A stretch of DNA of 64,000 nucleotides, from IMG/VR virus record IMGVR_UViG_3300022935_000005, positions 216,914-280,913 of that record. One strand, written 5' to 3'. Below the pieces are notes generated by a model. That model was not told the origin of the DNA. It was given only the letters and a program-made list of their open reading frames with translations, and searched no databases. Below are positions 5,953 to 61,382 of the stretch, in pieces (within the stretch, counting starts at the first letter, position 1; every line of letters begins with the position of its first letter). The position numbers were made by a program, and so were the translations under genes.

Positions 5953-7890
5953 ATGGGAGCACTTGGCGGCCACATGGCTCATCTTCATGAGTCATTAGAA
6001 CTTACGTTTGATGAACTTTCGACTATTCTTGATAGTGTAGCAAACGCTGACATATCGGCGACTGAAAAGGTTGATGGTCAAAACCTGTTTTTGACAGTGA
6101 AGAGTGACGGGTCTATCAACACTGCCCGTAATGGCGGGGACCTAAAGAAGGGTGGAATGACTCCTAATGAGTTTGCTGCTAAGTGGAAGGGTCACCCCGC
6201 GGAGAGCGCTTTCACTAAGGGGTTCGAGGCAATCTCTCAAGCTATTAAATCCCTTGACCAGTCGACTTTAAATGACTTGTTTGCCAATGGGACGAGATAC
6301 GTTAATATGGAAGTCATGTACCCAGGCAATCCGAACATGATCGTGTATGATGCCGGCAACGTGGTACTTCATAACTTCCAAACGTTCGATTCTTCTGGCG
6401 CTCCCGTCGATGATCCAGACGCCCGCACCGCATTTCAACAGCTTGTTTCTGCTGTCGATGAAGCTGAGTCTGATGTCGATGGTGAAGCTTGGCTAGTGAA
6501 GGGTCCTGTAATCGCCCAGCTGCAGAGGCTAGCAGATGGGACAGCGCTCAAGGAAGTTCAAGCAGCGATCCAGAGGATTGCTTCGCCAGTGGGGATGTCT
6601 GCGACACTTGGGGATCTCGCAGAGTTGCGCTTGAGAGCCACGGCAATTCAGGCCGGTATACCAGAAAATAAGGTCGACCAGATGATGGACGCTGCGTTCG
6701 AGCGTGAGGGCGCTGCGTCTGTTAGGGACATCAAGAAAGGTTTGACGAAAGAACAGCAGGGCGTTGTTTCGAAGTTGGCAACTAAAGCCAACGCCAGGAA
6801 AGCGGTTGGTGCAGCCATGAAGCCGCTTGAATTAGCGATTACTGACTTTGCGATTGAAGTCCTCAGAGGGATGGAGAGCTACTTTGTTTCTGATACTGAT
6901 AAGGAATTGGCCCGACAACGGAATGAGCTTTCTAGGGCCATTGACTACCTCGAGGGACTAGCTACATCAGGTGACGAGGAGGTCGGTAAGATGGTCGACC
7001 GCCAGCTTGAGAAGTTGACTGACATCGAGAATCAGATTAATAGTACGATGGAGGGTATCGTCTTTGAATATCCACCTGGATCGGGAGAACTTAAGAAGCT
7101 TACCGGATCATTTGCGATGATGAATCAATTGGTTGGGAGAGCAAAGCGAGCAGGTATGCCTTCTGGTAGTGCGGTCGAGGAATCGTATGGTCGAGCTGCG
7201 TTCTCTTCTAGTGAATCAGCTTCGATTTACGACTTGATCTTGAATGAGCAAGCCTTCGTCGATAAGGGAAAGAGGGTCGGGTTGATTCCTGTCTCTGGAA
7301 AGCCGTATCACGCAGGACATCATTATCTTGTAGAGCAGGCAGCTGCCGATAATGACGAAGTTGTGCTTTTCGTTTCTACCTCTGATAGGAAAAGGAAAGG
7401 TGAAATGTCTATCTTGGGTGTAGACATGCTTCAAGTCTGGAAGCAAGAGCTAGAGAAGATTATGCCTACAAATGTCCGGGTAGAGTACGGAGGATCTCCT
7501 GTTCGTAAAGTCTATGACACCATTGGGAAAGCGTGTGAAGCGGGTGACGCTGAGGAAACCTACGTCATCTATTCAGATCCCACAGACACGATGCAGAACT
7601 ACCCGCAAGTGAATAGAGACAAATACATGCAGCCTATGTGTCGAATGGGACAAGTGGTTTTTGCGGCAGAAGAAGACCCGACAAGGTTTGAGAGAGGGGA
7701 GGGTTCACCAGATGTAAGCGGTACGAAAATGCGCGCCGCCATGGCAGCTGGAGATTTTGAAACCTTTGCAGCTGGTATGCCCGCAGGGGTTAACTCAAGA
7801 AATGTCTGGAGCATCTTGACTCACGATGAACCTTCTCCCACGTCGGAATCCAAGAAGTACTCTCTGGTATCAGCCCTTTACGGAAGTTAG
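5953..7890 (+). CDS. Two-domain protein: ligase-like KxDG N-terminal domain plus C-terminal HIGH-type nucleotidyltransferase
   Basis: MGALGGHMAH start, TEKVDGQN, C-terminal GKPYHAGH and VSGTKMR. Confidence 0.6.
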   Translation: MGALGGHMAHLHESLELTFDELSTILDSVANADISATEKVDGQNLFLTVKSDGSINTARNGGDLKKGGMTPNEFAAKWKGHPAESAFTKGFEAISQAIKSLDQSTLNDLFANGTRYVNMEVMYPGNPNMIVYDAGNVVLHNFQTFDSSGAPVDDPDARTAFQQLVSAVDEAESDVDGEAWLVKGPVIAQLQRLADGTALKEVQAAIQRIASPVGMSATLGDLAELRLRATAIQAGIPENKVDQMMDAAFEREGAASVRDIKKGLTKEQQGVVSKLATKANARKAVGAAMKPLELAITDFAIEVLRGMESYFVSDTDKELARQRNELSRAIDYLEGLATSGDEEVGKMVDRQLEKLTDIENQINSTMEGIVFEYPPGSGELKKLTGSFAMMNQLVGRAKRAGMPSGSAVEESYGRAAFSSSESASIYDLILNEQAFVDKGKRVGLIPVSGKPYHAGHHYLVEQAAADNDEVVLFVSTSDRKRKGEMSILGVDMLQVWKQELEKIMPTNVRVEYGGSPVRKVYDTIGKACEAGDAEETYVIYSDPTDTMQNYPQVNRDKYMQPMCRMGQVVFAAEEDPTRFERGEGSPDVSGTKMRAAMAAGDFETFAAGMPAGVNSRNVWSILTHDEPSPTSESKKYSLVSALYGS

Positions 7891-9840: not shown

Positions 9841-11388
9841 ATGCCTTATAATAAAAGAAAGCAAAAGTGCACACAGTCAGACGGTGACAAAGGAAACTAT
9901 GTCCTTTCTTATACTGACAAGAAAGGGAAAAAGCACCGTGCCTGTCATACCAGTAAGAAGAACATGCAAGGTCAGATCGCTGCGATAGAAGCTGAAGCTG
10001 ACACGTCTGAATCTGACATGCTCGAAGAAATTAGAGCTTTAGTAAGAGAAGAGGTGATGAGGCTTGGGGGATCTTCAGCAGAGGTTGGTCCAATCAAGCA
10101 AGATATGGATCTTATGTCTGTAGCTAAGGATATGTTGGAAGCAGGCGACTCTGAAGGACTTGAGGATCTAGTTGACCTTAACAACGCTATCTATACTTCT
10201 ATCGATAAGCGGGACGCTTGGGAGTCTATTGGCGAACAGCTATTAACCGCTTGGGGCTTTGACGCTCCAGCTCAAGGTAAGAAGGCTGCTGCTGCTTCCG
10301 AGGGTGGTAGCGACGGCTCTGTCGCGACTTTTTGGGACGTGAGAAAAGAAGGTGTGCTATATTCTGTGAAGACGAGTTTTAAGACTCCAACGAAGCCGAC
10401 TAACTACAAGCAAGCAACTCAAAGCTCCAATATAAAGTTGTCAGCACTTTTTTCTGCAATAAAAGAAAATCCGCCAGGAACAAAGCTGGGAAATATTGGC
10501 TGTATTTACTCTGAGGAAGAAAACTCTCGTGTTATTGGGTGGGGAAACGTGACAGCACCAATATCGTCTGACGATCTTAGTCAAAAAATAAGGAGCATCA
10601 TCCAGAAAAATGTTGCCCCTGAAAATGTTGAAATCATTTTAAGCTCGTACGATTCTTTAGTGGGAACTGCTACTGGCAAAAAAATGTCTAAAGACGAGAC
10701 AGTTACAACAAAGCTTATCATTCGTGCACTCTCTTCAGCCGGACTATCGACCTCAGATGGAAGGCTTACAGGTAAGGCTGAACAATTTTTAGGCAGCTAC
10801 TCTGAAGGAACACCGATAGCATCTCTCGCTGTTTATGAACCGTCATATTTCTTTAAGGAGACGATGGGTAAATTAGGTGACGTTGATGATAACCAATTGT
10901 CTCTCTTTGATTTGCCAAAGGCAGATAAAGAATTTGCTTCTGACGGAGAAAGAAATGACGTTGTTAAGAGGCTTGGGACGCTAGCAAGAGGAATGTCTAC
11001 GACACAGCTTGACAAGCTATTGTCAGCAGCCAGAGAAATTATGAATGAGTCATTAATACGTGAGTACATTAGTGAGGCCACACTAATCAATGAAGAGTTA
11101 ACGGGCTCTGATAAGTCTGAAATCAAGCGGATGATAAAGAAAGAGATCGAAGGTGCCACCAACCGTAAAGAGATCGATAAGGCTTTTAAGAAAGCTTTCG
11201 ATTCAGAGCTCAAGAAATCCCTTAGCTCAAAGTCTGTTGTAGACGAGATCCAGAAAGAAGTTGAGAAGAGCATGGGCTCATCTGCGAACCGAGAAGTGGT
11301 GGTCCGGATTTGCAAAGACGTTTTAGTCAAGCTGTACAGAGAGCTTAGTTTCTCGTATAAGCCAGTTATTGACAGAATGAAAGTGTAA
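9841..11388 (+). CDS. Multi-domain hypothetical protein with possible PD-(D/E)xK-like central domain
   Basis: Basic N-terminus; central WESIGE...WDVRKEGVLYSVK; linkers IRALVREE and LIREYISEATLINEE. Confidence 0.5.
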   Translation: MPYNKRKQKCTQSDGDKGNYVLSYTDKKGKKHRACHTSKKNMQGQIAAIEAEADTSESDMLEEIRALVREEVMRLGGSSAEVGPIKQDMDLMSVAKDMLEAGDSEGLEDLVDLNNAIYTSIDKRDAWESIGEQLLTAWGFDAPAQGKKAAAASEGGSDGSVATFWDVRKEGVLYSVKTSFKTPTKPTNYKQATQSSNIKLSALFSAIKENPPGTKLGNIGCIYSEEENSRVIGWGNVTAPISSDDLSQKIRSIIQKNVAPENVEIILSSYDSLVGTATGKKMSKDETVTTKLIIRALSSAGLSTSDGRLTGKAEQFLGSYSEGTPIASLAVYEPSYFFKETMGKLGDVDDNQLSLFDLPKADKEFASDGERNDVVKRLGTLARGMSTTQLDKLLSAAREIMNESLIREYISEATLINEELTGSDKSEIKRMIKKEIEGATNRKEIDKAFKKAFDSELKKSLSSKSVVDEIQKEVEKSMGSSANREVVVRICKDVLVKLYRELSFSYKPVIDRMKV

Positions 11389-11417: not shown

Positions 11418-12359
11418 ATGTATGGCAGAATCCCAAATGAAGAGAAGATGTTTGAGCCAGGTGATACTTTCTTGTATCAGGGTTCTCAAGTGACAGTAGA
11501 TCGTCTTATACCCCACACGGTATACTACGAACATCGCCCCATCGCTAGCTACCAAGCTTATTATTACGTCGTGACGTTACCTGATGGTTCTTCAAGGTCG
11601 CTGAGCTTGCAAGACATCAAGCCGGAGGAGCAGTGAGTGAATCCTACAAAATTGGCGAAGTTGTGTATGTGACTCAATACTACGACGACATGATAGTCAA
11701 GGAAAGGTCTATCGGCTTGATAACTGACATAGATAGATATTCTTGGCTGAATGTCCACGGGGGTAAGACGGAGTTTGAGATTTACAAAATACTAGACTCT
11801 AGAACTAACACAACCGTGACAGCTGAGAAATTTGCAATTAGCAAGCTCGAGGAGTATGTGTAATGAGAGATTTCCTAATAAGCGCAGTTTCTTTTGCAAT
11901 TATCGCAACAATTCTCTGGGGCTCTTTTTTACTGCTTTGTGTGGTGATCGACTTTTTATCTGGAATGGGCATATCTGCTGGCTTTTTGTGGTTTACGTCT
12001 GGTCTAGCTGTGGCTTACTGTAAGCCTGCCGCGGCCCTGCTAAAGTTGTGTGAGTCAGTTTATATTAAGGTTCACGATATATTCTGGAGACTTGATTGAA
12101 GGTCACACCATCACCAAGCCTGATGAGACACCATCAGAGAGAGTACTATGACCCATCTCGTCTGATTCAGATCATCGACGAGCTGATAATAACATCACCT
12201 GATATTCCAAATTCTTACAGATTTATGACCTCGACAGGACTAATCATACATGAGAAGTGTAGGTCTTTAGAGGAGTTTCTTAAAAATAAGACTGATGCGA
12301 GGAGCTTGCGAGTCAAGAATCTTCTGTCCAGACTTCTAAGGCTTAATCAGGAGGTCTGA
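11418..12359 (+). CDS. Run of four small hypothetical ORFs (11418-11636, 11633-11863, 11863-12099, 12096-12359)
   Basis: Overlapping stop/start junctions; the first two have xxPGD/xxIGE beta-barrel-like starts. Confidence 0.55.
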
Positions 12360-12363
12360 TAAG

Positions 12364-13119
12364 ATGGACCCGTACGCTGTCTTAGGAGTGCAAAAGTCTG
12401 CATCACAAGATGAGATAAAGAAGTCATATCGAAAGTTAGCCCTTAAGTACCATCCTGACAGAAATACAGCCCCCGAAGCATCAGAACAATTTAAGAAAGT
12501 CTCTGAAGCTTATTCCATGATAGGTGATCCGCAAGCTAGGAAAGACTACGAGTTGAAGTCTGGAAACCCGCGAAGCCGAGACTTTGAAGAGTTCTTCCGC
12601 GGAAGCCAGTGGGGATCATGGGATGAGATGTTCGGGACAAGATATCAAAAGACGCGACCTTACATTATAAAGGTGAAAATAGACTTCTCTCTGGAAGAGC
12701 TGAACAGCAGGCCCATGAAAAGCTTCCACTTGGATGGTCAGAGGATCGACTTTCGAGTCCCTCGTGGCGTTCGTCCAGGAGAAATCTTCAACGTCGAGTT
12801 AGGTGGTGGTCAGGAATTACATATAACTGCGGGAGTACTAAAGAATAAGCTGTTTGAGCTTAAGGGTGATGACCTGCATACACAAGTGAGTGTCCCTATT
12901 GACATTGCGCTGAAGGGTGGCGAGTTAAAGGTCCCGACGTTGTCAGGAACAATTAGTCTAAAGATTCCCGCGAGAACAAGTTCACACACAAAGCTAAGAG
13001 TGAAGTCATCTGGCCTACCTTTGAAAATTGCAGGTTTCGGATCTATAATCTATGAAGTGAGGTTGGATCTGAAGAAAATAAGTCCTGAATTATTATCATG
13101 GTCTTCTTCTTTCAATTAA
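12364..13119 (+). CDS. DnaJ-class co-chaperone (J domain plus C-terminal domain, no Zn finger)
   Basis: DPYAVLGV...[14 protein letters not shown]-terminal GDDLHT...[12 protein letters not shown]. Confidence 0.92.
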
Positions 13120-21385: not shown

Positions 21386-21613
21386 ATGAAAATCACAAAG
21401 AACCAACTTAGAAGAATTATCCGGGAAGAGCGCGCTAAGCTTGCACGTGGCAGAGCTGTTAACGAACAGTACTCACCGGGTCCCGAGGAGCGCCGCGCAC
21501 GGTCCGCGATCGACCAGATTGTCACAGACTTTCTAGAGAGCGATGAGGGTGATCCGGCGTTAATTGCAGAGATTCTGAGAGAGATTGCCAACGACGTCGA
21601 CGAAGAAATGTAG
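21386..21613 (+). CDS. MKITK-leader protein 1
   Basis: MKITKNQLRRIIREERAKLARGRAVNE. Confidence 0.8.
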   Translation: MKITKNQLRRIIREERAKLARGRAVNEQYSPGPEERRARSAIDQIVTDFLESDEGDPALIAEILREIANDVDEEM

Positions 21614-21628
21614 TGGTCTGGGGGCGGC

Positions 21629-22165
21629 ATGAGAATCACAAAGAGACAACTTAGAAGAATTATCCGAGAAGCGATTGATGTTGTTGATAGAGACACTGGC
21701 GAAGTTATGCGCTTTTCTGATGATAGTAGCGACAGCATGGCAGATCTTCCTGAAAAAGCCTGGCCTGACCTGGTAAAGCGGCTTGGGTTGAGCCCTAAAG
21801 ACGTGGGTCTTGATGCTGCCGGTAATCAAGGATTTGAGCTAGACCAGAATGAGTTTATACGCCTTGACAACGAGACTCGTGAAAAAGCCTACAACCGTAA
21901 GATGAAAAAACAGGCAGCTGCCTACAAGGCTGATCGGGAAAGATTGGATATCGACAATCTCCTCGAGAGACTCCGCTATTGGGCACAAGACGCAGCGTCT
22001 GATTACATGGCTGACAATCCAGACACCGACCTGCAGGATATCGCCTATGACCTTGCGGACGCTTGGCAATTCGCGTTCGAAGAAGATGAACGAGAAGAAC
22101 TGTTGTGGCACTTTGACGGTGACCTTAACGACCTTAAGATTTTCGCAGCGGAGAGTATGGGATGA
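21629..22165 (+). CDS. MKITK-leader protein 2
   Basis: MRITKRQLRRIIREA. Confidence 0.8.
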   Translation: MRITKRQLRRIIREAIDVVDRDTGEVMRFSDDSSDSMADLPEKAWPDLVKRLGLSPKDVGLDAAGNQGFELDQNEFIRLDNETREKAYNRKMKKQAAAYKADRERLDIDNLLERLRYWAQDAASDYMADNPDTDLQDIAYDLADAWQFAFEEDEREELLWHFDGDLNDLKIFAAESMG

Positions 22166-22458
22166 AAATCACAAAACGTCAACTACGAAGAATCATTAAG
22201 GAAGAGAAAGCTCGCATTTTGGCTGAGCAACAACTTGATCCTCAAGTTGCCGCCCAAGCTCTTGCGGAGCTAAAGAACGATGGGTGGTTTAGTATGATAC
22301 AAACAGCGGCTACTGACGCAGCTGGTGACCTTGAGCAGCTCAGTGATCAGGTTGATGTCAAGTTAATGGACGCCGGCCTGAACGAGCTTGCCGTAGATAT
22401 CAGAAGTGTTGTTGAGCTATTGGACAAGATTAGACAAGCAGCGTACGGTCAGAGGTAA
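22162..22458 (+). CDS. MKITK-leader protein 3
   Basis: MKITKRQLRRIIKEEKARILAE. Confidence 0.8.
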   Translation: MKITKRQLRRIIKEEKARILAEQQLDPQVAAQALAELKNDGWFSMIQTAATDAAGDLEQLSDQVDVKLMDAGLNELAVDIRSVVELLDKIRQAAYGQR

Positions 22459-22563
22459 CATGATGAAAAAAAAGCTAATGGAGCTGCAAAAGCTCGCTAG
22501 AGATATTCGCGTGAATGTCCAACCGACAGCTGAGCAATCAGCAAGCAAACGAGGGAGTTTCGA

Positions 22564-23019
22564 ATGAAAATTACAAAGACGCAACTAAGACAGATTGTTA
22601 GAGAAAGCGCAGCGATGGACGATGCTGTTTATGAGGCTGGCTACAAAGACGCGATGCAAGATCGCCCACATGGTGCTAATGCAGATATGCGTGATATGGA
22701 TCCAAGATCATATGACTACGGTTTCGATAAGGGTACCGCTGACCGCATGGACATGCAGCGACCGCTTGGAACCAGAGGGTTTTACGAAGGTAAGGTGAGA
22801 ATCAAAAAGAGCGACCTTCAAAGAATCGTCAAGGAAGAGCTTATGTCTGAAGTCCGGACCGACGCGGACCTTGAAATGGACGCTATGTGGGACGAACTGT
22901 TTCAGGCACTAAAGAACAAAAGCTTCGGACTTGACCACGGTCTAGAAAGAGATGAAATTTACATCATGACAGGTGCTGCTGAGGGCATCACGGTCAAGAT
23001 AATGCGAAGAGGTCGATAA
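22564..23019 (+). CDS. MKITK-leader protein 4, with an internal second leader
   Basis: MKITKTQLRQIVRES; internal VRIKKSDLQRIVKEELMSE. Confidence 0.8.
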   Translation: MKITKTQLRQIVRESAAMDDAVYEAGYKDAMQDRPHGANADMRDMDPRSYDYGFDKGTADRMDMQRPLGTRGFYEGKVRIKKSDLQRIVKEELMSEVRTDADLEMDAMWDELFQALKNKSFGLDHGLERDEIYIMTGAAEGITVKIMRRGR

Positions 23020-23246
23020 TGCGTATTGCAAAGTCAGAGCTTAGAAGAATTATTGCAGAAGAGAGAGCAAAGCTTCAAGAACAGCGCCGCGGCCCAAGCG
23101 AAGCGCAAATAGAAGACGCCGTCTCTGGGATCGAGTTTGAGTTAAACAGACTGTATGACCAAGGGATGGATAACGCTGGCTTGCACAAAGTGCTCGACCA
23201 GATTAAGATTGACATTGACCGTGGATTTGTAGGAGAGCCAAGATGA
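23019..23246 (+). CDS. MKITK-leader protein 5
   Basis: MRIAKSELRRIIAEERAKLQE. Confidence 0.8.
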   Translation: MRIAKSELRRIIAEERAKLQEQRRGPSEAQIEDAVSGIEFELNRLYDQGMDNAGLHKVLDQIKIDIDRGFVGEPR

Positions 23247-23503
23247 AAATCACAAAGAACCAATTACGAAGAATCATCAAAGAAGAGCGTGCTAAGCTGC
23301 TCAAAGAAGGTGGATATCGTCACCCGAAAACCGGTGAGGATCTGCTTCTTATGTTAAATGACGTCGTCGACAAACTCATGGACGCTGGTATGGATTTCTA
23401 CGAGCTTGCTGATGAACTTCGAGGTTTGGCTGATGATGTGGAAAACAGCCAGCCTGAAGAGTCTCCGAAATTTATCGACATGACAGATCCAAGGGAGTTG
23501 TAA
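23243..23503 (+). CDS. MKITK-leader protein 6
   Basis: MKITKNQLRRIIKEERAKLLKE. Confidence 0.8.
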   Translation: MKITKNQLRRIIKEERAKLLKEGGYRHPKTGEDLLLMLNDVVDKLMDAGMDFYELADELRGLADDVENSQPEESPKFIDMTDPREL

Positions 23504-23892
23504 TGAAAATCACGAAGAGCCAACTAAGAAGAATCATTAAGGAAGAGAAGGCGAAGCTGCTCAAAGAGTATGGCGCTATGAACATGGAAGCCCTGAGCCC
23601 GCTGGTTCAGTTTGGACAGGCGTATGTTGGTCTCGGCGATGCAGTTCAGTCACAGCTGATTGATCTTGTCAATGCACACATCGAAGGACGCATCGAAGAC
23701 GCAGTATATGAGATGAATCCAAATGCACTTGACATGGCGTTCCAGAGATTACAGCAACCCTTATCTGCTCTAGCAAGAGCAGGTAGCGAAGACGCCGAGG
23801 AAGTGATGGATGCCATGGAGGCAGCTGCTGAAATATTCGCAGAGGGCGACGCAGAAGTGGACGCCGATGCACGAGCTGCAGGAGATATATAA
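23503..23892 (+). CDS. MKITK-leader protein 7
   Basis: MKITKSQLRRIIKEEKAKLLKE. Confidence 0.8.
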   Translation: MKITKSQLRRIIKEEKAKLLKEYGAMNMEALSPLVQFGQAYVGLGDAVQSQLIDLVNAHIEGRIEDAVYEMNPNALDMAFQRLQQPLSALARAGSEDAEEVMDAMEAAAEIFAEGDAEVDADARAAGDI

Positions 23893-23893
23893 A

Positions 23894-24211
23894 ATGAAAA
23901 TCACAAAGAACCAACTTAGAAGAATTATCAAAGAAGAGAAGACAAAACTTCTCGTTGAGATGAACGCTGTGGCAGACGCCGAGCGCTCCCTGGGTTTGTA
24001 CGCTAACGCATCCACAGTCGACAAGCTGTCTAGCGCCCTACAAAGTCTTTTGATGGAAGTCGAAACAGGTGCGATTGAAGACGGTCTTGAAGAAGATGAA
24101 GCTGAAGACATGGCAGCGAACGCTGGACTCATGGCAGTCGCTAACGCATTCCAGTCAGTGGGTATGATTGCTGAATACGACGCACTATACAGATTACTAC
24201 AGCGGGGTTAA
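23894..24211 (+). CDS. MKITK-leader protein 8
   Basis: MKITKNQLRRIIKEEKTKLLVE; likely start is the ATG at 23894, not 23810. Confidence 0.8.
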   Translation: MKITKNQLRRIIKEEKTKLLVEMNAVADAERSLGLYANASTVDKLSSALQSLLMEVETGAIEDGLEEDEAEDMAANAGLMAVANAFQSVGMIAEYDALYRLLQRG

Positions 24212-24217
24212 GACAAG

Positions 24218-24511
24218 ATGAAAATCACAAAGAACCAACTGCGAAGAATTATCAAGGAAGAGAAAGCGAAGCTTATGAACGAGCAGTTCAATTTTGCTGC
24301 TGCCGATCAAGAGATGATTAAGTGCGCTACACAGATGGGAGCTCTATTGGCAGGCCGGCCTGACGTTGCCACGGCAGTCCGTGATGCTCTAGCTGCAGGT
24401 CCTTTTAAGAAGGGAGCCGAGGCTCTTTTTAAAGCGTATGAGTCTGCACAAGCTGCTGCCGACACAGAGTACATGAGCTTTGGTGCCGGATACGATGACG
24501 ACGATTTTTAG
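24218..24511 (+). CDS. MKITK-leader protein 9
   Basis: MKITKNQLRRIIKEEKAKLMNE. Confidence 0.8.
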   Translation: MKITKNQLRRIIKEEKAKLMNEQFNFAAADQEMIKCATQMGALLAGRPDVATAVRDALAAGPFKKGAEALFKAYESAQAAADTEYMSFGAGYDDDDF

Positions 24512-24526
24512 GACTAGGAGAACAAA

Positions 24527-24988
24527 ATGAAAATCACAAAAAGACAATTACTTAGAATAATCAGAGAAGAAAAGGCCCGCATCGCTGAGCAGACTGTAGG
24601 TGTTGAAGACGTTTCTCAGTCAGAGGATGCGTTCGGTGGTGGAGACGTCGAGGAGGAGATCTTTGTCGATGCAGATGCCGATTCTTTACTGAACCAGAAC
24701 GATGATCCCGGTGAGGTTACCGACATCGAGGTCATACCTGAGCGTGTACGTTTGAAGAGACACCTCCGCAAGATTGTGTCAGAAGTTGCTGGCGGTGGTG
24801 GAGCGCTTCCTCCCGTTGATGACCTCGCTACTAAGCTTGCTAGTGTTGGATCTGAAGAAGCTCTTGACTTTATCCAGCGTGTTCTTGCCGCTATGTCGCG
24901 TAAAGCTGGCGCCTCGGCGGCTCCCGCTGAAGATGCAGTGGTAGAACCACCGGCTCCAATGCCCCCGGTTCCTGACGAAGAAGTTTAA
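24527..24988 (+). CDS. MKITK-leader protein 10, with an internal leader-like segment
   Basis: MKITKRQLLRIIREEKARIAE; internal VRLKRHLRKIVSE. Confidence 0.8.
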   Translation: MKITKRQLLRIIREEKARIAEQTVGVEDVSQSEDAFGGGDVEEEIFVDADADSLLNQNDDPGEVTDIEVIPERVRLKRHLRKIVSEVAGGGGALPPVDDLATKLASVGSEEALDFIQRVLAAMSRKAGASAAPAEDAVVEPPAPMPPVPDEEV

Positions 24989-25012
24989 TTAGCTAGAAGA
25001 GGAGGATGCCTC

Positions 25013-25777
25013 ATGGAAAGCAAAAGCTTACGTCTTATAAGACAACTTATACGCGAATCTCTCCTCGCTGAAGGTGTCTATGATCCGGGGGTCCTGAAAG
25101 CTGTTTTTATGGCTGGCGGACCAGGAAGTGGAAAAAGCTTCACTGCTAAGAAGATCTTTGGTGTACCGAGAGAAGTTGCAGCATACGCGACAGGTACTGC
25201 TAGCGGCTTGAAGCTTGTCAATTCAGATCCAGCATTTGAACATTTCCTCAAGAAAGCGGGTATCGATCCTGCTAGCCTTGGAAAGATGTCAAAAGAGGAG
25301 TTCGAAGCTGTAACAGTCGGACCCGATAGTCCACGTGGTAAGGCAAAGACTCTCAGGGGCCAAGCTCAAGAACTATATCAGGGCGGCCGACTAGGGCTAG
25401 TCATCGACGGCACTGGAGACGACTTTGAAAAGATTAGTCGGAAGAAAGGTGAGCTTGAAAAGCTTGGGTACGATACCTACATGATTTTCGTCAACACCTC
25501 AGAAGAAGTGGCACTACAAAGAAACAGAGATCGTGAACGCAAGCTTCCTGACGAACTCGTATCTCAGATCTGGGGTGATGTCCAAAAGAACCTCGGCGCG
25601 TTTCAACAACTCTTCGGTTCTGACCGCATCGCGATTATTGACAATACAGAGTACGGTCCAGTTCCAGAAAAAGTCCAGAAAGCCGTTGACAAGTTCATCT
25701 CTCAACCAGTTAAGAATATCATCGGTAAGAAGTGGATTGAGAACGAGCTTCGTATGAAAGACCGCTCTGACAAATAA
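25013..25777 (+). CDS. P-loop kinase (zeta-toxin/AAA_33-like) with leader-like N-terminus
   Basis: KAVFMAGGPGSGKSF, LVNSD..FE, GLVIDGTG, MIFVNTS.EVALQRN..R.R; N-terminus LRLIRQLIRESLLAE. Confidence 0.8.
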   Translation: MESKSLRLIRQLIRESLLAEGVYDPGVLKAVFMAGGPGSGKSFTAKKIFGVPREVAAYATGTASGLKLVNSDPAFEHFLKKAGIDPASLGKMSKEEFEAVTVGPDSPRGKAKTLRGQAQELYQGGRLGLVIDGTGDDFEKISRKKGELEKLGYDTYMIFVNTSEEVALQRNRDRERKLPDELVSQIWGDVQKNLGAFQQLFGSDRIAIIDNTEYGPVPEKVQKAVDKFISQPVKNIIGKKWIENELRMKDRSDK

Positions 25778-30461: not shown

Positions 30462-30851
30462 ATGAAAATAACAGAAAGCAACATCAGAAAGATAATCAGA
30501 GAAGAGCTCTCCTCACTTATGGAGCAGGACGAGGCGAAGCCAAAGAAGCTCGATGATCTTGACTTTAAGTCTGATGACCGAATGGAGTATGAGAGATGGG
30601 CTCGTTCTGCTGGTCACGTTTCTCCTGAAGTCCAATCAACTCTAGTTTCGTATTTCTTAAACCAAAATCTACAGAATGCTCATGACTTGCACCAGAGGCT
30701 CTGTGACGAACTCGGTTTAGACCATGATGCAGTGATGGCGGCTATGGAAAACCGACTAGAAAAAGAAGAAGATCCAGCTGCAGAGGAATCTGCTCGAGAG
30801 CTCGATCTAGCACGCGTCGCAGAAGCAGTATCTGCAATCTCTAAGCTGTAA
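30462..30851 (+). CDS. MKITK-leader protein, dispersed member
   Basis: MKITESNIRKIIREELSSLME; ATATTTA at 30435 and AGGAG RBS. Confidence 0.75.
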   Translation: MKITESNIRKIIREELSSLMEQDEAKPKKLDDLDFKSDDRMEYERWARSAGHVSPEVQSTLVSYFLNQNLQNAHDLHQRLCDELGLDHDAVMAAMENRLEKEEDPAAEESARELDLARVAEAVSAISKL

Positions 30852-60877: not shown

Positions 60878-61156
60878 ATGAAAATCACAAAAAGACAGCT
60901 TAGAGGGATTATCAGAGAAGCTATGCAGCCCGGCGGAATGGCTGTACGTTTGCAAACAAATAAGCTGGTGAAAGCGGGTCTTGCAGATTTTTCAGGACCT
61001 ATCGAGTACAAGAGTCCACAAAATTTTGTCATTAGAGACGTAGAGAAATCCAAAGTGCCTGAATTCATTAGCTGGATCGAGGAAATCGATTCAATGATGC
61101 GCCATGAAGAACCAGGATCCGCGCCTCACTTGGTAGACTTGCATTACGGAGTGTAG
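60878..61156 (+). CDS. MKITK-leader protein, dispersed member
   Basis: MKITKRQLRGIIREA; ATATTTA at 60848 and GGAGG RBS. Confidence 0.75.
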   Translation: MKITKRQLRGIIREAMQPGGMAVRLQTNKLVKAGLADFSGPIEYKSPQNFVIRDVEKSKVPEFISWIEEIDSMMRHEEPGSAPHLVDLHYGV

Positions 61157-61157
61157 A

Positions 61158-61382
61158 ATGAAAATCACAAAGCGACAACTAAGAAGAATTATTAGAGAAG
61201 CTACTGTATCCCCTAAGTTACCCAATCCAGATCCTCACTATGAAGATGGATGGAATGACGCTATTGTGTACGGTGAACCTAGACAAACTCCCACTCATCC
61301 ACCCAAAGCCGTTGATGCGTATTGGGACGGTTATCAAGATGGTGAAGATCATGCACGAAGGTCCGAAGAGCCTCTTCATTAA
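61158..61382 (+). CDS. MKITK-leader protein, dispersed member
   Basis: MKITKRQLRRIIREA; body Y.DGW.D...Y.DGY.DG. Confidence 0.75.
   Translation: MKITKRQLRRIIREATVSPKLPNPDPHYEDGWNDAIVYGEPRQTPTHPPKAVDAYWDGYQDGEDHARRSEEPLH

What the first reader, a model, noticed from the sequence alone, without database searches (positions are those of the whole stretch)
22564..24988. Internal leader copies suggest polyprotein-like fusions of payload units
Seen: ORF 22564-23019 has a second leader mid-protein (EGKVRIKKSDLQRIVKEELMSE), and ORF 24527-24988 has VRLKRHLRKIVSE. Inference: adjacent units fused by loss of a stop codon and the product may be processed into separate payloads at the Glu sites. This would favour a cleavage role for the motif over a purely translational one.
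Basis: partly seen in the sequence, partly recalled or inferred. Interest (0 to 1): 0.6.

Follow-up and report, generated by a model that had tools for sequence, protein, structure and literature searches.

The report
Multi-unit leader-tagged phage head proteins
Two small genes of an uncultured 281-kb T4-like phage each carry a second, internal copy of the 14-residue tag that starts about twenty of its small acidic proteins; relatives show these are fusions of once-separate tagged units, probably cut apart by the phage's head protease, though cleavage is untested.

Summary
Both ORFs (22564-23019 and 24527-24988) carry a mid-protein copy of the leader MKITKxQLRRIIKE. These copies, with one in a third ORF outside the window, are the three best internal leader matches in the whole phage proteome.

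The fusion reading is supported. Each half exists elsewhere as a stand-alone leader-plus-payload protein, or joined to other partners. Across related contigs 38 of 461 leader-bearing frames hold 2-4 leaders. Their internal copies show a decay series of ribosome-binding site and start codon.

ORF 24527 is not a recent accident. All 33 homologue clusters keep the internal K..L[RK][RK][LIM][VIL]xE. Its first half is homologous to a segment of the phage's putative scaffold protein.

Cleavage is plausible but unproven. The phage encodes a T4 gp21-type (S77) prohead protease. Its capsid protein has L-R-E exactly where T4 gp23 is cut. Leaders end in [IV]-x-E, and internal leaders have a Glu on both sides.

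The closest precedents are the T4 capsid-targeting sequences and the T4 core proteins gp22, gp67 and gp68, which are cut into several pieces. I call this a new variant of a known kind. Internal initiation at GTG in ORF 22564 remains a live rival.

The parts
21386..24988 (+). Tandem array of ten leader-bearing ORFs: 21386, 21629, 22162, 22564, 23019, 23243, 23503, 23894, 24218, 24527. Spacing is -4 to +15 nt, apart from one 105-nt gap. All payloads are acidic (pI 4.1-5.0).
22564..23019 (+). ORF A, 151 aa, a two-unit protein
22564..22605 (+). ORF A N-terminal leader (residues 1-14, ends V-R-E14)
22606..22794 (+). ORF A first payload module (residues 15-77, ends GFYEGK). It is conserved in P0002-P0017, where it carries other tails.
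22795..22836 (+). ORF A internal leader copy (V78-E91). It begins GTG behind GAAGG. No nucleotide change lies in codons 76-92 against the 92% orthologue.
22837..23016 (+). ORF A second payload module (residues 92-151, ends ...RRGR). It is a stand-alone leader-tagged protein in many relatives.
24527..24988 (+). ORF B, 153 aa, a conserved two-leader protein (33 homologue clusters)
24527..24568 (+). ORF B N-terminal leader (residues 1-14), within predicted helix 5-22
24569..24742 (+). ORF B first module (residues 15-72). It is acidic and predicted disordered, ends I-P-E72, and is homologous to residues 326-373 of the phage's putative scaffold and to internal segments of scaffold-like proteins of relatives.
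24743..24784 (+). ORF B internal leader-like helix (R73-E86). There is no start codon. L80 and E86 are invariant, and positions 83/84 are always [LIM]/[VIL].
24785..24985 (+). ORF B second module (residues 87-153, helix 97-129). It stands alone behind a canonical leader in P0102 and P0104.
25013..25777 (+). Flanking P-loop protein (Zeta_toxin/AAA_33 hits) with a leader-like N-terminus. I used it as the anchor to fetch related loci.
60878..61382 (+). Two more leader-bearing ORFs of the same family (60878-61156, 61158-61382)
30462..30851 (+). Diverged leader-bearing ORF (leader variant beginning MKITESN)

Best explanation
The window is the last 64 kb of a 280,913-bp uncultured T4-like jumbo phage from salt-marsh and estuarine water. 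About twenty of its small acidic proteins begin with the same basic amphipathic 14-residue leader, which ends in [IV]-x-Glu.

I read this leader as the counterpart of the T4 capsid-targeting sequence. In that model it docks the protein onto the prohead core and is then removed by the phage's gp21-type (S77) prohead protease, which cuts after Glu.

ORF A and ORF B are multi-unit members of this family. Formerly separate leader+payload genes became one reading frame, and the leader of the downstream unit stayed as an internal linear motif.

Inside the prohead the protease would cut at the Glu that ends the internal leader, and probably also at the Glu just before it. That would release two payload peptides from one precursor. 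T4 does the same with its core proteins gp22, gp67 and gp68.

Shown:
- the internal copies exist and exceed chance;
- the halves are modular and exist separately in relatives;
- the translation signals of internal copies decay while the peptide is kept;
- the internal motif has been conserved for a long time;
- the protease is present, and the capsid protein has an L-x-E site at the T4-homologous position;
- half of ORF B is homologous to the putative scaffold.

Inferred: capsid targeting, cleavage at the internal sites, and the fate of the fragments.
For: Phage context:
- The phage has a T4-like head module: Peptidase_S77 at 90.6 bits and phrog_207 at 6.6e-49; MCP phrog_138; gene order as in T4.
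- The MCP residues V-L-R-E61|S align with T4 gp23 F-L-T-E65|A. T4 gp21 cuts after Glu in L/I-x-E, and T4 CTS propeptides are 10-19 residues long (PMC9026906; PMC3012670).

The leader acts as a peptide:
- Identity among copies is 0.81 at codon positions 1+2 and 0.64 at position 3. The DNA upstream of the leaders is unrelated.

The internal copies exceed chance.

The halves are separate or recombined in relatives.

The pattern is general:
- 423 frames hold one leader and 38 hold 2-4. In the internal copies, Glu sits at leader position 14 in 38 of 40 and P3 is I or V in 40 of 40, although the scoring PSSM includes those positions.
- The RBS and start codon of internal copies decay.
- A Glu lies 2-5 residues before internal leaders in 38 of 43, against 34% for the same-frame reading before true starts (p = 2.8e-12).
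- [LIV]xE occurs just upstream in 14 of 43, against a 12% background.

ORF B:
- The internal motif is invariant in 33 clusters while the flanking linkers vary by indels.
- Both leaders are predicted helices and the first payload is predicted disordered.
- The first module matches the phage's own putative scaffold (i-E 3.4e-7) and scaffold-like proteins of relatives (E 3e-8 to 4e-4 against 1.84 billion proteins).

ORF A: in 12 of 13 homologues of the first module, an [LIV]-x-E follows the module end whatever tail comes next.
Against: - There are no protein-level data. The phage is uncultured, so neither packaging nor cleavage has been observed.
- The leader has no significant sequence similarity to T4 proteins. 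The match to T4 gp67 has E = 0.91.
- The array lies about 130 kb from the head module.
- The payloads are acidic, unlike the basic T4 internal proteins.
- The P3 residue at the upstream flanking Glu is [LIV] in only a third of cases.
- ORF A's internal copy begins with GTG behind an SD-like GAAGG and is frozen at synonymous sites. That fits internal initiation as well as cleavage.
- AF2 confidence is modest for ORF B (pLDDT 64.6) and poor for ORF A (48.1).
Confidence: 0.55

Rival explanations
1. Internal translation start. In ORF A the internal GTG, with GAAGG four nucleotides upstream, is used as a second start. The gene would then yield the full-length protein plus a separate 74-residue leader+payload protein. 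The arrangement would be a nested gene, not a polyprotein that needs cutting.
For: - The GAAGG-N4-GTG arrangement is present.
- Seventeen consecutive codons (76-92) show no change, not even a synonymous one, against an orthologue with 46 changed codons in 151.
- 18 of 20 internal leaders in relatives that keep ATG/GTG also keep an SD-like 4-mer. One example is GAGGA-N7-ATG in L163.
- T4 itself uses in-frame internal starts in genes 17 and 21 (annotation; PMC9026906).
Against: - It cannot apply to ORF B. The codon there is GTA, there is no SD, and none of the 33 homologues has a consistent start-like residue.
- It cannot apply to the 22 of 40 internal copies in relatives with non-start codons that still keep the leader.
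- The 4-nt spacer in ORF A is shorter than the 6-9 nt seen at the true starts of the array.
- It is compatible with cleavage of the full-length form.
Confidence: 0.2
2. The internal leader is kept as a docking or oligomerisation helix and is not cut. In this reading multi-leader proteins are multivalent core-binding or scaffold-like proteins that stay intact, or are degraded as a whole.
For: - Whole leaders, not just the x-E end, are preserved in many internal copies.
- ORF B's first half is scaffold-like.
- Both leaders are predicted helices.
- In T4 an Asp at the end of the CTS still allows targeting without processing (PMC9026906). Targeting and cutting are therefore separable.
Against: - The Glu ending the internal leader is invariant and is never Asp: 33 of 33 in the ORF B family and 38 of 40 in relatives.
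- An extra Glu is enriched just upstream of the internal leader.
- In the old ORF B family the first four leader positions have decayed while the cut-site half is kept. In T4 it is the first half that targets and the second half that is processed.
Confidence: 0.15
3. The leader has nothing to do with the capsid. It could be a shared N-terminal helix for another purpose, such as host-target binding, regulated turnover or a DNA-level recombination cassette boundary. The internal copies would then be by-products of domain shuffling.
For: - There is no family hit for any unit and no significant similarity to T4 CTS-bearing proteins.
- The array is far from the head genes.
- Metagenome contigs break or re-join at leader boundaries. 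This fits leader-mediated recombination, or assembly ambiguity.
Against: - One unit is homologous to the putative scaffold protein.
- Small head-module proteins next to the protease have leader-like N-termini.
- The motif fits the specificity expected of the encoded protease.
- The decayed internal copies are conserved at the peptide level.
Confidence: 0.1

Closest known systems
T4 capsid-targeting sequence (CTS) of internal proteins IPI, IPII, IPIII and Alt
   Same: - A short N-terminal propeptide shared by otherwise unrelated small proteins.
- It ends in a hydrophobic-x-Glu site for the gp21-type prohead protease.
- The phage encodes that protease.
- The cargo genes are variable and clustered (PMC3012670, PMC9026906).
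   Different: - The sequence is different and the tag is longer (14-22 residues).
- There are about twenty copies per genome in tandem arrays, not four.
- The cargo is acidic rather than basic.
- The tag recurs inside proteins. I found no report of that for T4 internal proteins in the papers read.
- Function is untested.
T4 prohead core proteins gp22 (scaffold), gp67 (annotated 'pip' in the T4 record) and gp68
   Same: - Small or acidic core proteins that gp21 cuts into several fragments at L/I-x-E.
- The first half of ORF B is homologous to a segment of this phage's putative scaffold.
- Several Glu sites per protein.
   Different: - The array is not in the head module.
- No significant similarity to T4 gp67 (E = 0.91).
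- The units here are modular cassettes, each with its own complete leader. They are found separately or in different combinations in relatives.
Inner-body and ejection proteins of phiKZ, 201phi2-1 and SPN3US
   Same: - Jumbo phages with diverged gp21 homologues that cut after Glu.
- Large paralogue families of head proteins.
- Propeptides with several redundant cleavage sites (PMC5694885, PMC10052503, PMC9026906).
   Different: - Those propeptides exceed 100 residues and the motifs are A/S/G-x-E.
- The families are true paralogues.
- Here only the 14-residue tag is shared and the payloads are unrelated.
Viral polyproteins cut by a virus-encoded protease
   Same: One reading frame holds several units, separated by a recurring recognition motif for the virus's own protease.
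   Different: - That comparison is from general knowledge only.
- Here most units are separate genes, and only about 8% of frames are multi-unit.
- Cutting would take place inside the prohead.
- No evidence of processing yet.

Membership tests
T4-type CTS-tagged prohead proteins | Short (10-19 residue) N-terminal propeptide shared by unrelated cargo proteins | tested here: met
   A 14-residue leader, extended to about 22 in many units, heads 15 or more ORFs with unrelated payloads.
T4-type CTS-tagged prohead proteins | Propeptide ends in L/I-x-E, the gp21 cleavage motif | tested here: met
   Leader positions 12-14 are [IV]-x-E in all copies. Internal copies: V-K-E91 in ORF A and V-S-E86 in ORF B. 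This is at sequence level only.
T4-type CTS-tagged prohead proteins | Genome encodes a gp21-type (Peptidase_S77) prohead protease with T4-like specificity | tested here: met
   PF03420 at 90.6 bits and phrog_207 at 6.6e-49. The MCP L-R-E61 aligns with T4 gp23 L-T-E65. Specificity is inferred, not measured.
T4-type CTS-tagged prohead proteins | [quoted passage not shown] | not testable with these tools
   This needs particle proteomics or an in vitro protease assay.
T4-type CTS-tagged prohead proteins | Sequence homology to T4 IP, Alt or gp67 propeptides | tested here: not met
   T4 gp67 against a unit gives E = 0.91. Only a resemblance in flavour to the gp24 and gp67 segments. The T4 IP sequences themselves were not compared.
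Prohead scaffold/core proteins (gp22-like) | Homology to the scaffold protein encoded between protease and MCP | tested here: met
   Met for the first half of ORF B only: HMM i-E 3.4e-7 and BLASTP 1e-5 to the phage's own putative scaffold, and E 3e-8 to 4e-4 to scaffold-like proteins of relatives. The scaffold identity rests on gene position and on synteny with cultured phages. No family model matched.
Prohead scaffold/core proteins (gp22-like) | Gene lies in the head morphogenesis module | tested here: not met
   The array is at genome 238-242 kb and the head module at 102-113 kb.
Protease-processed polyprotein | Units separated by the protease's motif are independent functional modules | tested here: met
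   Both halves of ORF A and of ORF B occur alone or with other partners in relatives.
Protease-processed polyprotein | The precursor is actually cleaved at the junctions | not testable with these tools
   No proteomic data exist. The complex prediction gave no answer.

The most novel reading that the evidence does not exclude
A widespread group of uncultured aquatic T4-like jumbo phages uses one universal 14-residue tag as both a capsid address and a release site. Tagged cassettes can be strung together into precursors of two to four units, which are cut apart inside the prohead. New combinations arise by loss of the stop codon between neighbours and by recombination at the tag. The tag itself derives from a helix of the scaffold protein. 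The small acidic cargoes would be a rapidly shuffled arsenal delivered with the DNA.
Probability: 0.3. Interest if true: 0.75.

Novelty: new variant of a known kind. Interest (0 to 1): 0.55.

Why it matters
If the tag is a capsid address plus cut site, these phages show how a virus can load many unrelated small proteins into its head with one portable signal. They would also show how gene fusion turns single cargoes into multi-cargo precursors.

The idea gives concrete predictions that mass spectrometry can test: neo-N-termini after E14 and E91 in ORF A, and after E14, E72 and E86 in ORF B.

It also offers a short, natural, modular targeting and release tag distinct from the T4 CTS already used to package foreign proteins.

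The link between the tag-bearing family and the scaffold protein suggests where capsid-targeting sequences come from.

Tried and rejected
Family and collection searches:
- Pfam and PHROG scans of all ten array ORFs found nothing at useful E-values.
- tblastn of ORF A against 50,697 GenBank phage records found no match.
- The Atlas look-alike search for P0024 and P0057 returned only unnamed viral clusters, all scoring below 0.9.
- A full-text search for the leader strings found no paper.

Halves of ORF B:
- A word search with the C half of ORF B alone found nothing at E <= 0.01. This is a weak negative, and the exhaustive search later found stand-alone forms.

Structure:
- The AF2 model of ORF A has pLDDT 48.1 and was not used for fold search.
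- Complex prediction of the S77 protease with ORF A residues 62-125 gave no answer, with score 0.01 against a mark of 0.34. This is neither support nor evidence against.

Ideas revised or rejected:
- I first read the residues EGK before ORF A's internal leader as a translated RBS relic. That needed revising. GFYEG is the conserved end of the first module in homologues with other tails, and Glu before internal leaders is far more frequent than a translated RBS would give.
- T4 gp67 as a homologue of the units is rejected as a membership claim (E = 0.91).
- Chance or assembly artefact is rejected.

Procedure:
The step was redone from coordinates and a PSSM built from references.
Full report
**What the window is**

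The window is bases 216,914-280,913 of a 280,913-bp IMG/VR virus record estimated at 92% complete. Elsewhere the genome has a T4-like head module in the T4 gene order:
- large terminase, then portal;
- a Peptidase_S77 prohead protease (PF03420 at 90.6 bits; phrog_207 at 6.6e-49);
- several small proteins;
- a 505-aa acidic protein in the scaffold position;
- a gp23-type capsid protein (phrog_138 at 3.1e-73).

The closest cultured capsid proteins are only 36-51% identical. They belong to Microcystis phage Mel-JY01, Flavobacterium phage immuto, Rhodothermus phage RM378 and cyanomyoviruses. Near-identical DNA is held by 14 salt-marsh runs, including one RNA library. Estuary and freshwater runs hold it partially.

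**The leader family**

Ten + strand ORFs sit in tandem at 21386-24988, spaced -4 to +15 nt apart except for one 105-nt gap. All begin with MKITKxQLRRIIKE, often continued by EKAKL. All their payloads are acidic, with pI 4.1-5.0.
- More copies lie at 60878, 61158 and 30462 in the window.
- Others lie at genome 12976, 13399, 13678 and 197228.
- No unit matches any Pfam or PHROG family.

The leader is conserved as a peptide. Pairwise identity in codons 2-14 is 0.81 at codon positions 1+2 and 0.64 at position 3. The 30 nt upstream are unrelated (0.31).

**Check of the observation**

ORF A (22564-23019) has an internal copy at V78-E91. ORF B (24527-24988) has one at R73-E86.

I scored a PSSM of leader positions 5-14 over all 68,015 internal positions of the phage's 404 ORF products. 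The three best hits were these two copies and a third in genome ORF 12020-12973. Shuffled proteomes are expected to give 0.01-0.06 such hits, and 0.82 for the fourth-best hit. All three hits lie in proteins that also start with a leader.

A plain HMMER model supports copy A (i-E 0.0055) but not copy B (i-E 6.4). Copy B lacks residues matching the start of the leader. Its homologues P0076, P0079 and P0086-P0088 have a fuller leader at the same spot.

The ORFs are not artefacts:
- An independent salt-marsh contig spans each ORF with at most one difference and no gap.
- So do contigs from an RNA library and from an estuary variant.
- ORF A's 92% orthologue keeps the fusion.

**Are the halves separate in relatives?**

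ORF A:
- Its second module, which ends ...RRGR, is a stand-alone 83-100 aa protein with a canonical leader in many clusters, such as P0019, P0020, P0024 and P0038.
- In L086 it is the first gene of a 12-gene leader array.
- The same module also sits behind at least five unrelated first units, always preceded by an internal leader (P0016/P0023, P0021, P0042, P0056, P0018).
- The first module occurs with several unrelated tails (P0002-P0012) and as a second unit behind an internal leader (P0013).
- In L163 it is fused to the homologue of the window's separate unit 23894-24211 (P0014). That array is syntenic with the window's.

ORF B:
- 33 clusters of full-length homologues (141-177 aa; 43-68% identity among the 32 with near-full-length matches) all keep the two-leader form.
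- The exhaustive search also found the second module alone behind a canonical leader (P0102, P0104).
- It found the first module alone (P0094, P0098), or fused through an internal leader to other second units (P0091-P0093, P0095, P0096).

I found no relative in which the two halves of either ORF are neighbouring separate genes.

**How general the pattern is, and how it arose**

The strict leader pattern matched 348 stretches in IMG/VR, many on contigs of 170-293 kb. Over all the related loci I fetched, 423 distinct open frames hold one leader core and 38 (8%) hold two to four.

The first codons of the internal copies are:
- ATG in 13 and GTG in 5;
- one-step derivatives (ATA, GTA, GTT, ATC) in 8;
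- unrelated codons in 14.

An SD-like 4-mer lies at -17..-4 as follows:

| Position class | Share with SD-like 4-mer |
|---|---|
| True starts | 78% |
| Internal copies that keep a start codon | 90% |
| Internal copies that lost the start codon | 39% |
| Random positions | 18% |

This decay series is what fusion of once-independent genes predicts. It also shows that the peptide leader outlives its translation signals.

**Evidence bearing on cleavage**

- T4 gp21 cuts after Glu in L/I-x-E, and T4 CTS propeptides are 10-19 residues long (PMC9026906).
- This phage's capsid protein has L-R-E61|S aligned with T4 gp23 L-T-E65|A. The cut after Glu65 is from my own knowledge of T4; the review read gives T4 propeptides of 7 to 65 residues. 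A T4-like specificity is therefore likely here.
- All leaders end in [IV]-x-E.
- In the ORF B family L80 and E86 are 33 of 33, position 84 is always V, I or L, and position 83 is always L, I or M. The linkers on both sides vary by indels.
- In that old family the first four leader positions have decayed while the half carrying the cut site is kept. In the T4 CTS the first half targets and the last residues direct processing.

One pattern was unexpected. A Glu lies 2-5 residues before the internal leader in 38 of 43 cases. The same-frame reading of DNA before true starts gives 34% (Fisher p = 2.8e-12). An [LIV]-x-E is present there in 14 of 43, against a 12% background. ORF B has I-P-E72 at that place. 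Internal leaders are thus bracketed by Glu, as expected if the leader is excised. The 43 cases include some related sequences, so they are not all independent.

In homologues of ORF A's first module, an [LIV]-x-E follows the module end in 12 of 13, whatever tail comes next.

**Link to the prohead core**

ORF B's first module matches residues 326-373 of the phage's own scaffold-position protein (HMM i-E 3.4e-7, BLASTP 1e-5).

Together with the second half of its leader, it also matches internal segments of long acidic proteins of relatives. These share the C-terminal end of that protein (E 3e-8 to 4e-4 against 1.84 billion proteins).

The scaffold assignment rests on gene position and on a conserved C-terminus found just upstream of the capsid gene in Flavobacterium phage immuto and Microcystis phage Mel-JY01. 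No family model matched.

Two small genes beside the protease also have leader-like N-termini.

AF2 predicts helices for both ORF B leaders (5-22 and 72-89) and disorder for the first payload, at pLDDT 64.6.

**What remains open**

No protein data exist. ORF A's internal leader starts with GTG behind GAAGG. It shows no change in codons 76-92 against an orthologue with 46 changed codons of 151, 34 of them synonymous. With about 0.3 changes per codon, no change in 15 codons has a probability of about 0.005 (my estimate). This points to a nucleotide-level constraint and keeps internal initiation alive as a rival for ORF A. It does not apply to ORF B.

**Verdict**

The fusion reading is supported. 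The processing reading is plausible and made sharper, but it is not shown.

The nearest known systems are the T4 CTS-tagged internal proteins and the multiply cut T4 core proteins. The internal, Glu-bracketed, recombining tag in large arrays is a new variant of that kind.

Noticed in passing
L085 (genome 199426-205572, outside the window): A second leader family. Nine tandem ORFs of 170-319 aa all begin with an M.LLREYIRELL.E-type N-terminus, another amphipathic helix ending in L-x-E. No internal copies were found.
   Followed up: partly
window 25013-25777: The gene just after the array encodes a P-loop protein that hits Zeta_toxin (37.2 bits, above the cut-off) and AAA_33. Its N-terminus is leader-like. 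It has 467 relatives in IMG/VR contigs.
   Followed up: partly
L084:1021-1974 (genome 12020-12973): A third two-leader ORF (317 aa), and the best internal leader hit in the proteome. Its homologue in L163 (3780-4253) stops just after the degenerate internal leader, so the second half is separable there too.
   Followed up: partly
window 22459-22563: The only long gap in the array (105 nt) is absent from an estuary variant and from one salt-marsh contig (joint 22462 to 22564).
   Followed up: no
window 21386-24300, leader starts: Metagenome contigs often match only a leader and then diverge, or join one leader to another unit. The joints and loose ends sit at 21629, 22162, 23243, 23894 and 24218. 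This could be recombination at leaders, or assembly ambiguity at the repeat.
   Followed up: no
window 23005-23021: The conserved C-terminal RRGR of ORF A's second module is encoded by the DNA that also carries the AGAGG ribosome-binding site of the next gene. Part of that conservation may therefore be at the nucleotide level.
   Followed up: no
window 22789-22839: Codons 76-92 of ORF A show no change, not even a synonymous one, against a 92% orthologue (L089). This is the longest unchanged run in the gene.
   Followed up: partly
window 22318-25100: Contigs from a salt-marsh metatranscriptome library (X11) cover both ORFs nearly perfectly. The tool warns that DNA can be present in such libraries, so transcription is not shown.
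   Followed up: no
H16-H19, MW353176.1 126494-126814: In Flavobacterium phage immuto the gene just upstream of the capsid gene is annotated 'DNA polymerase phi-like protein'. It is homologous to the C-terminus of this phage's scaffold-position protein, so the annotation is probably wrong.
   Followed up: no
L090 (T4) 6782-7024 and 11324-11353: The T4 gp24 propeptide (ends LLRE) and a gp67 segment (LIKEEK) resemble the leader in flavour. The similarity is not significant (E = 0.91).
   Followed up: yes
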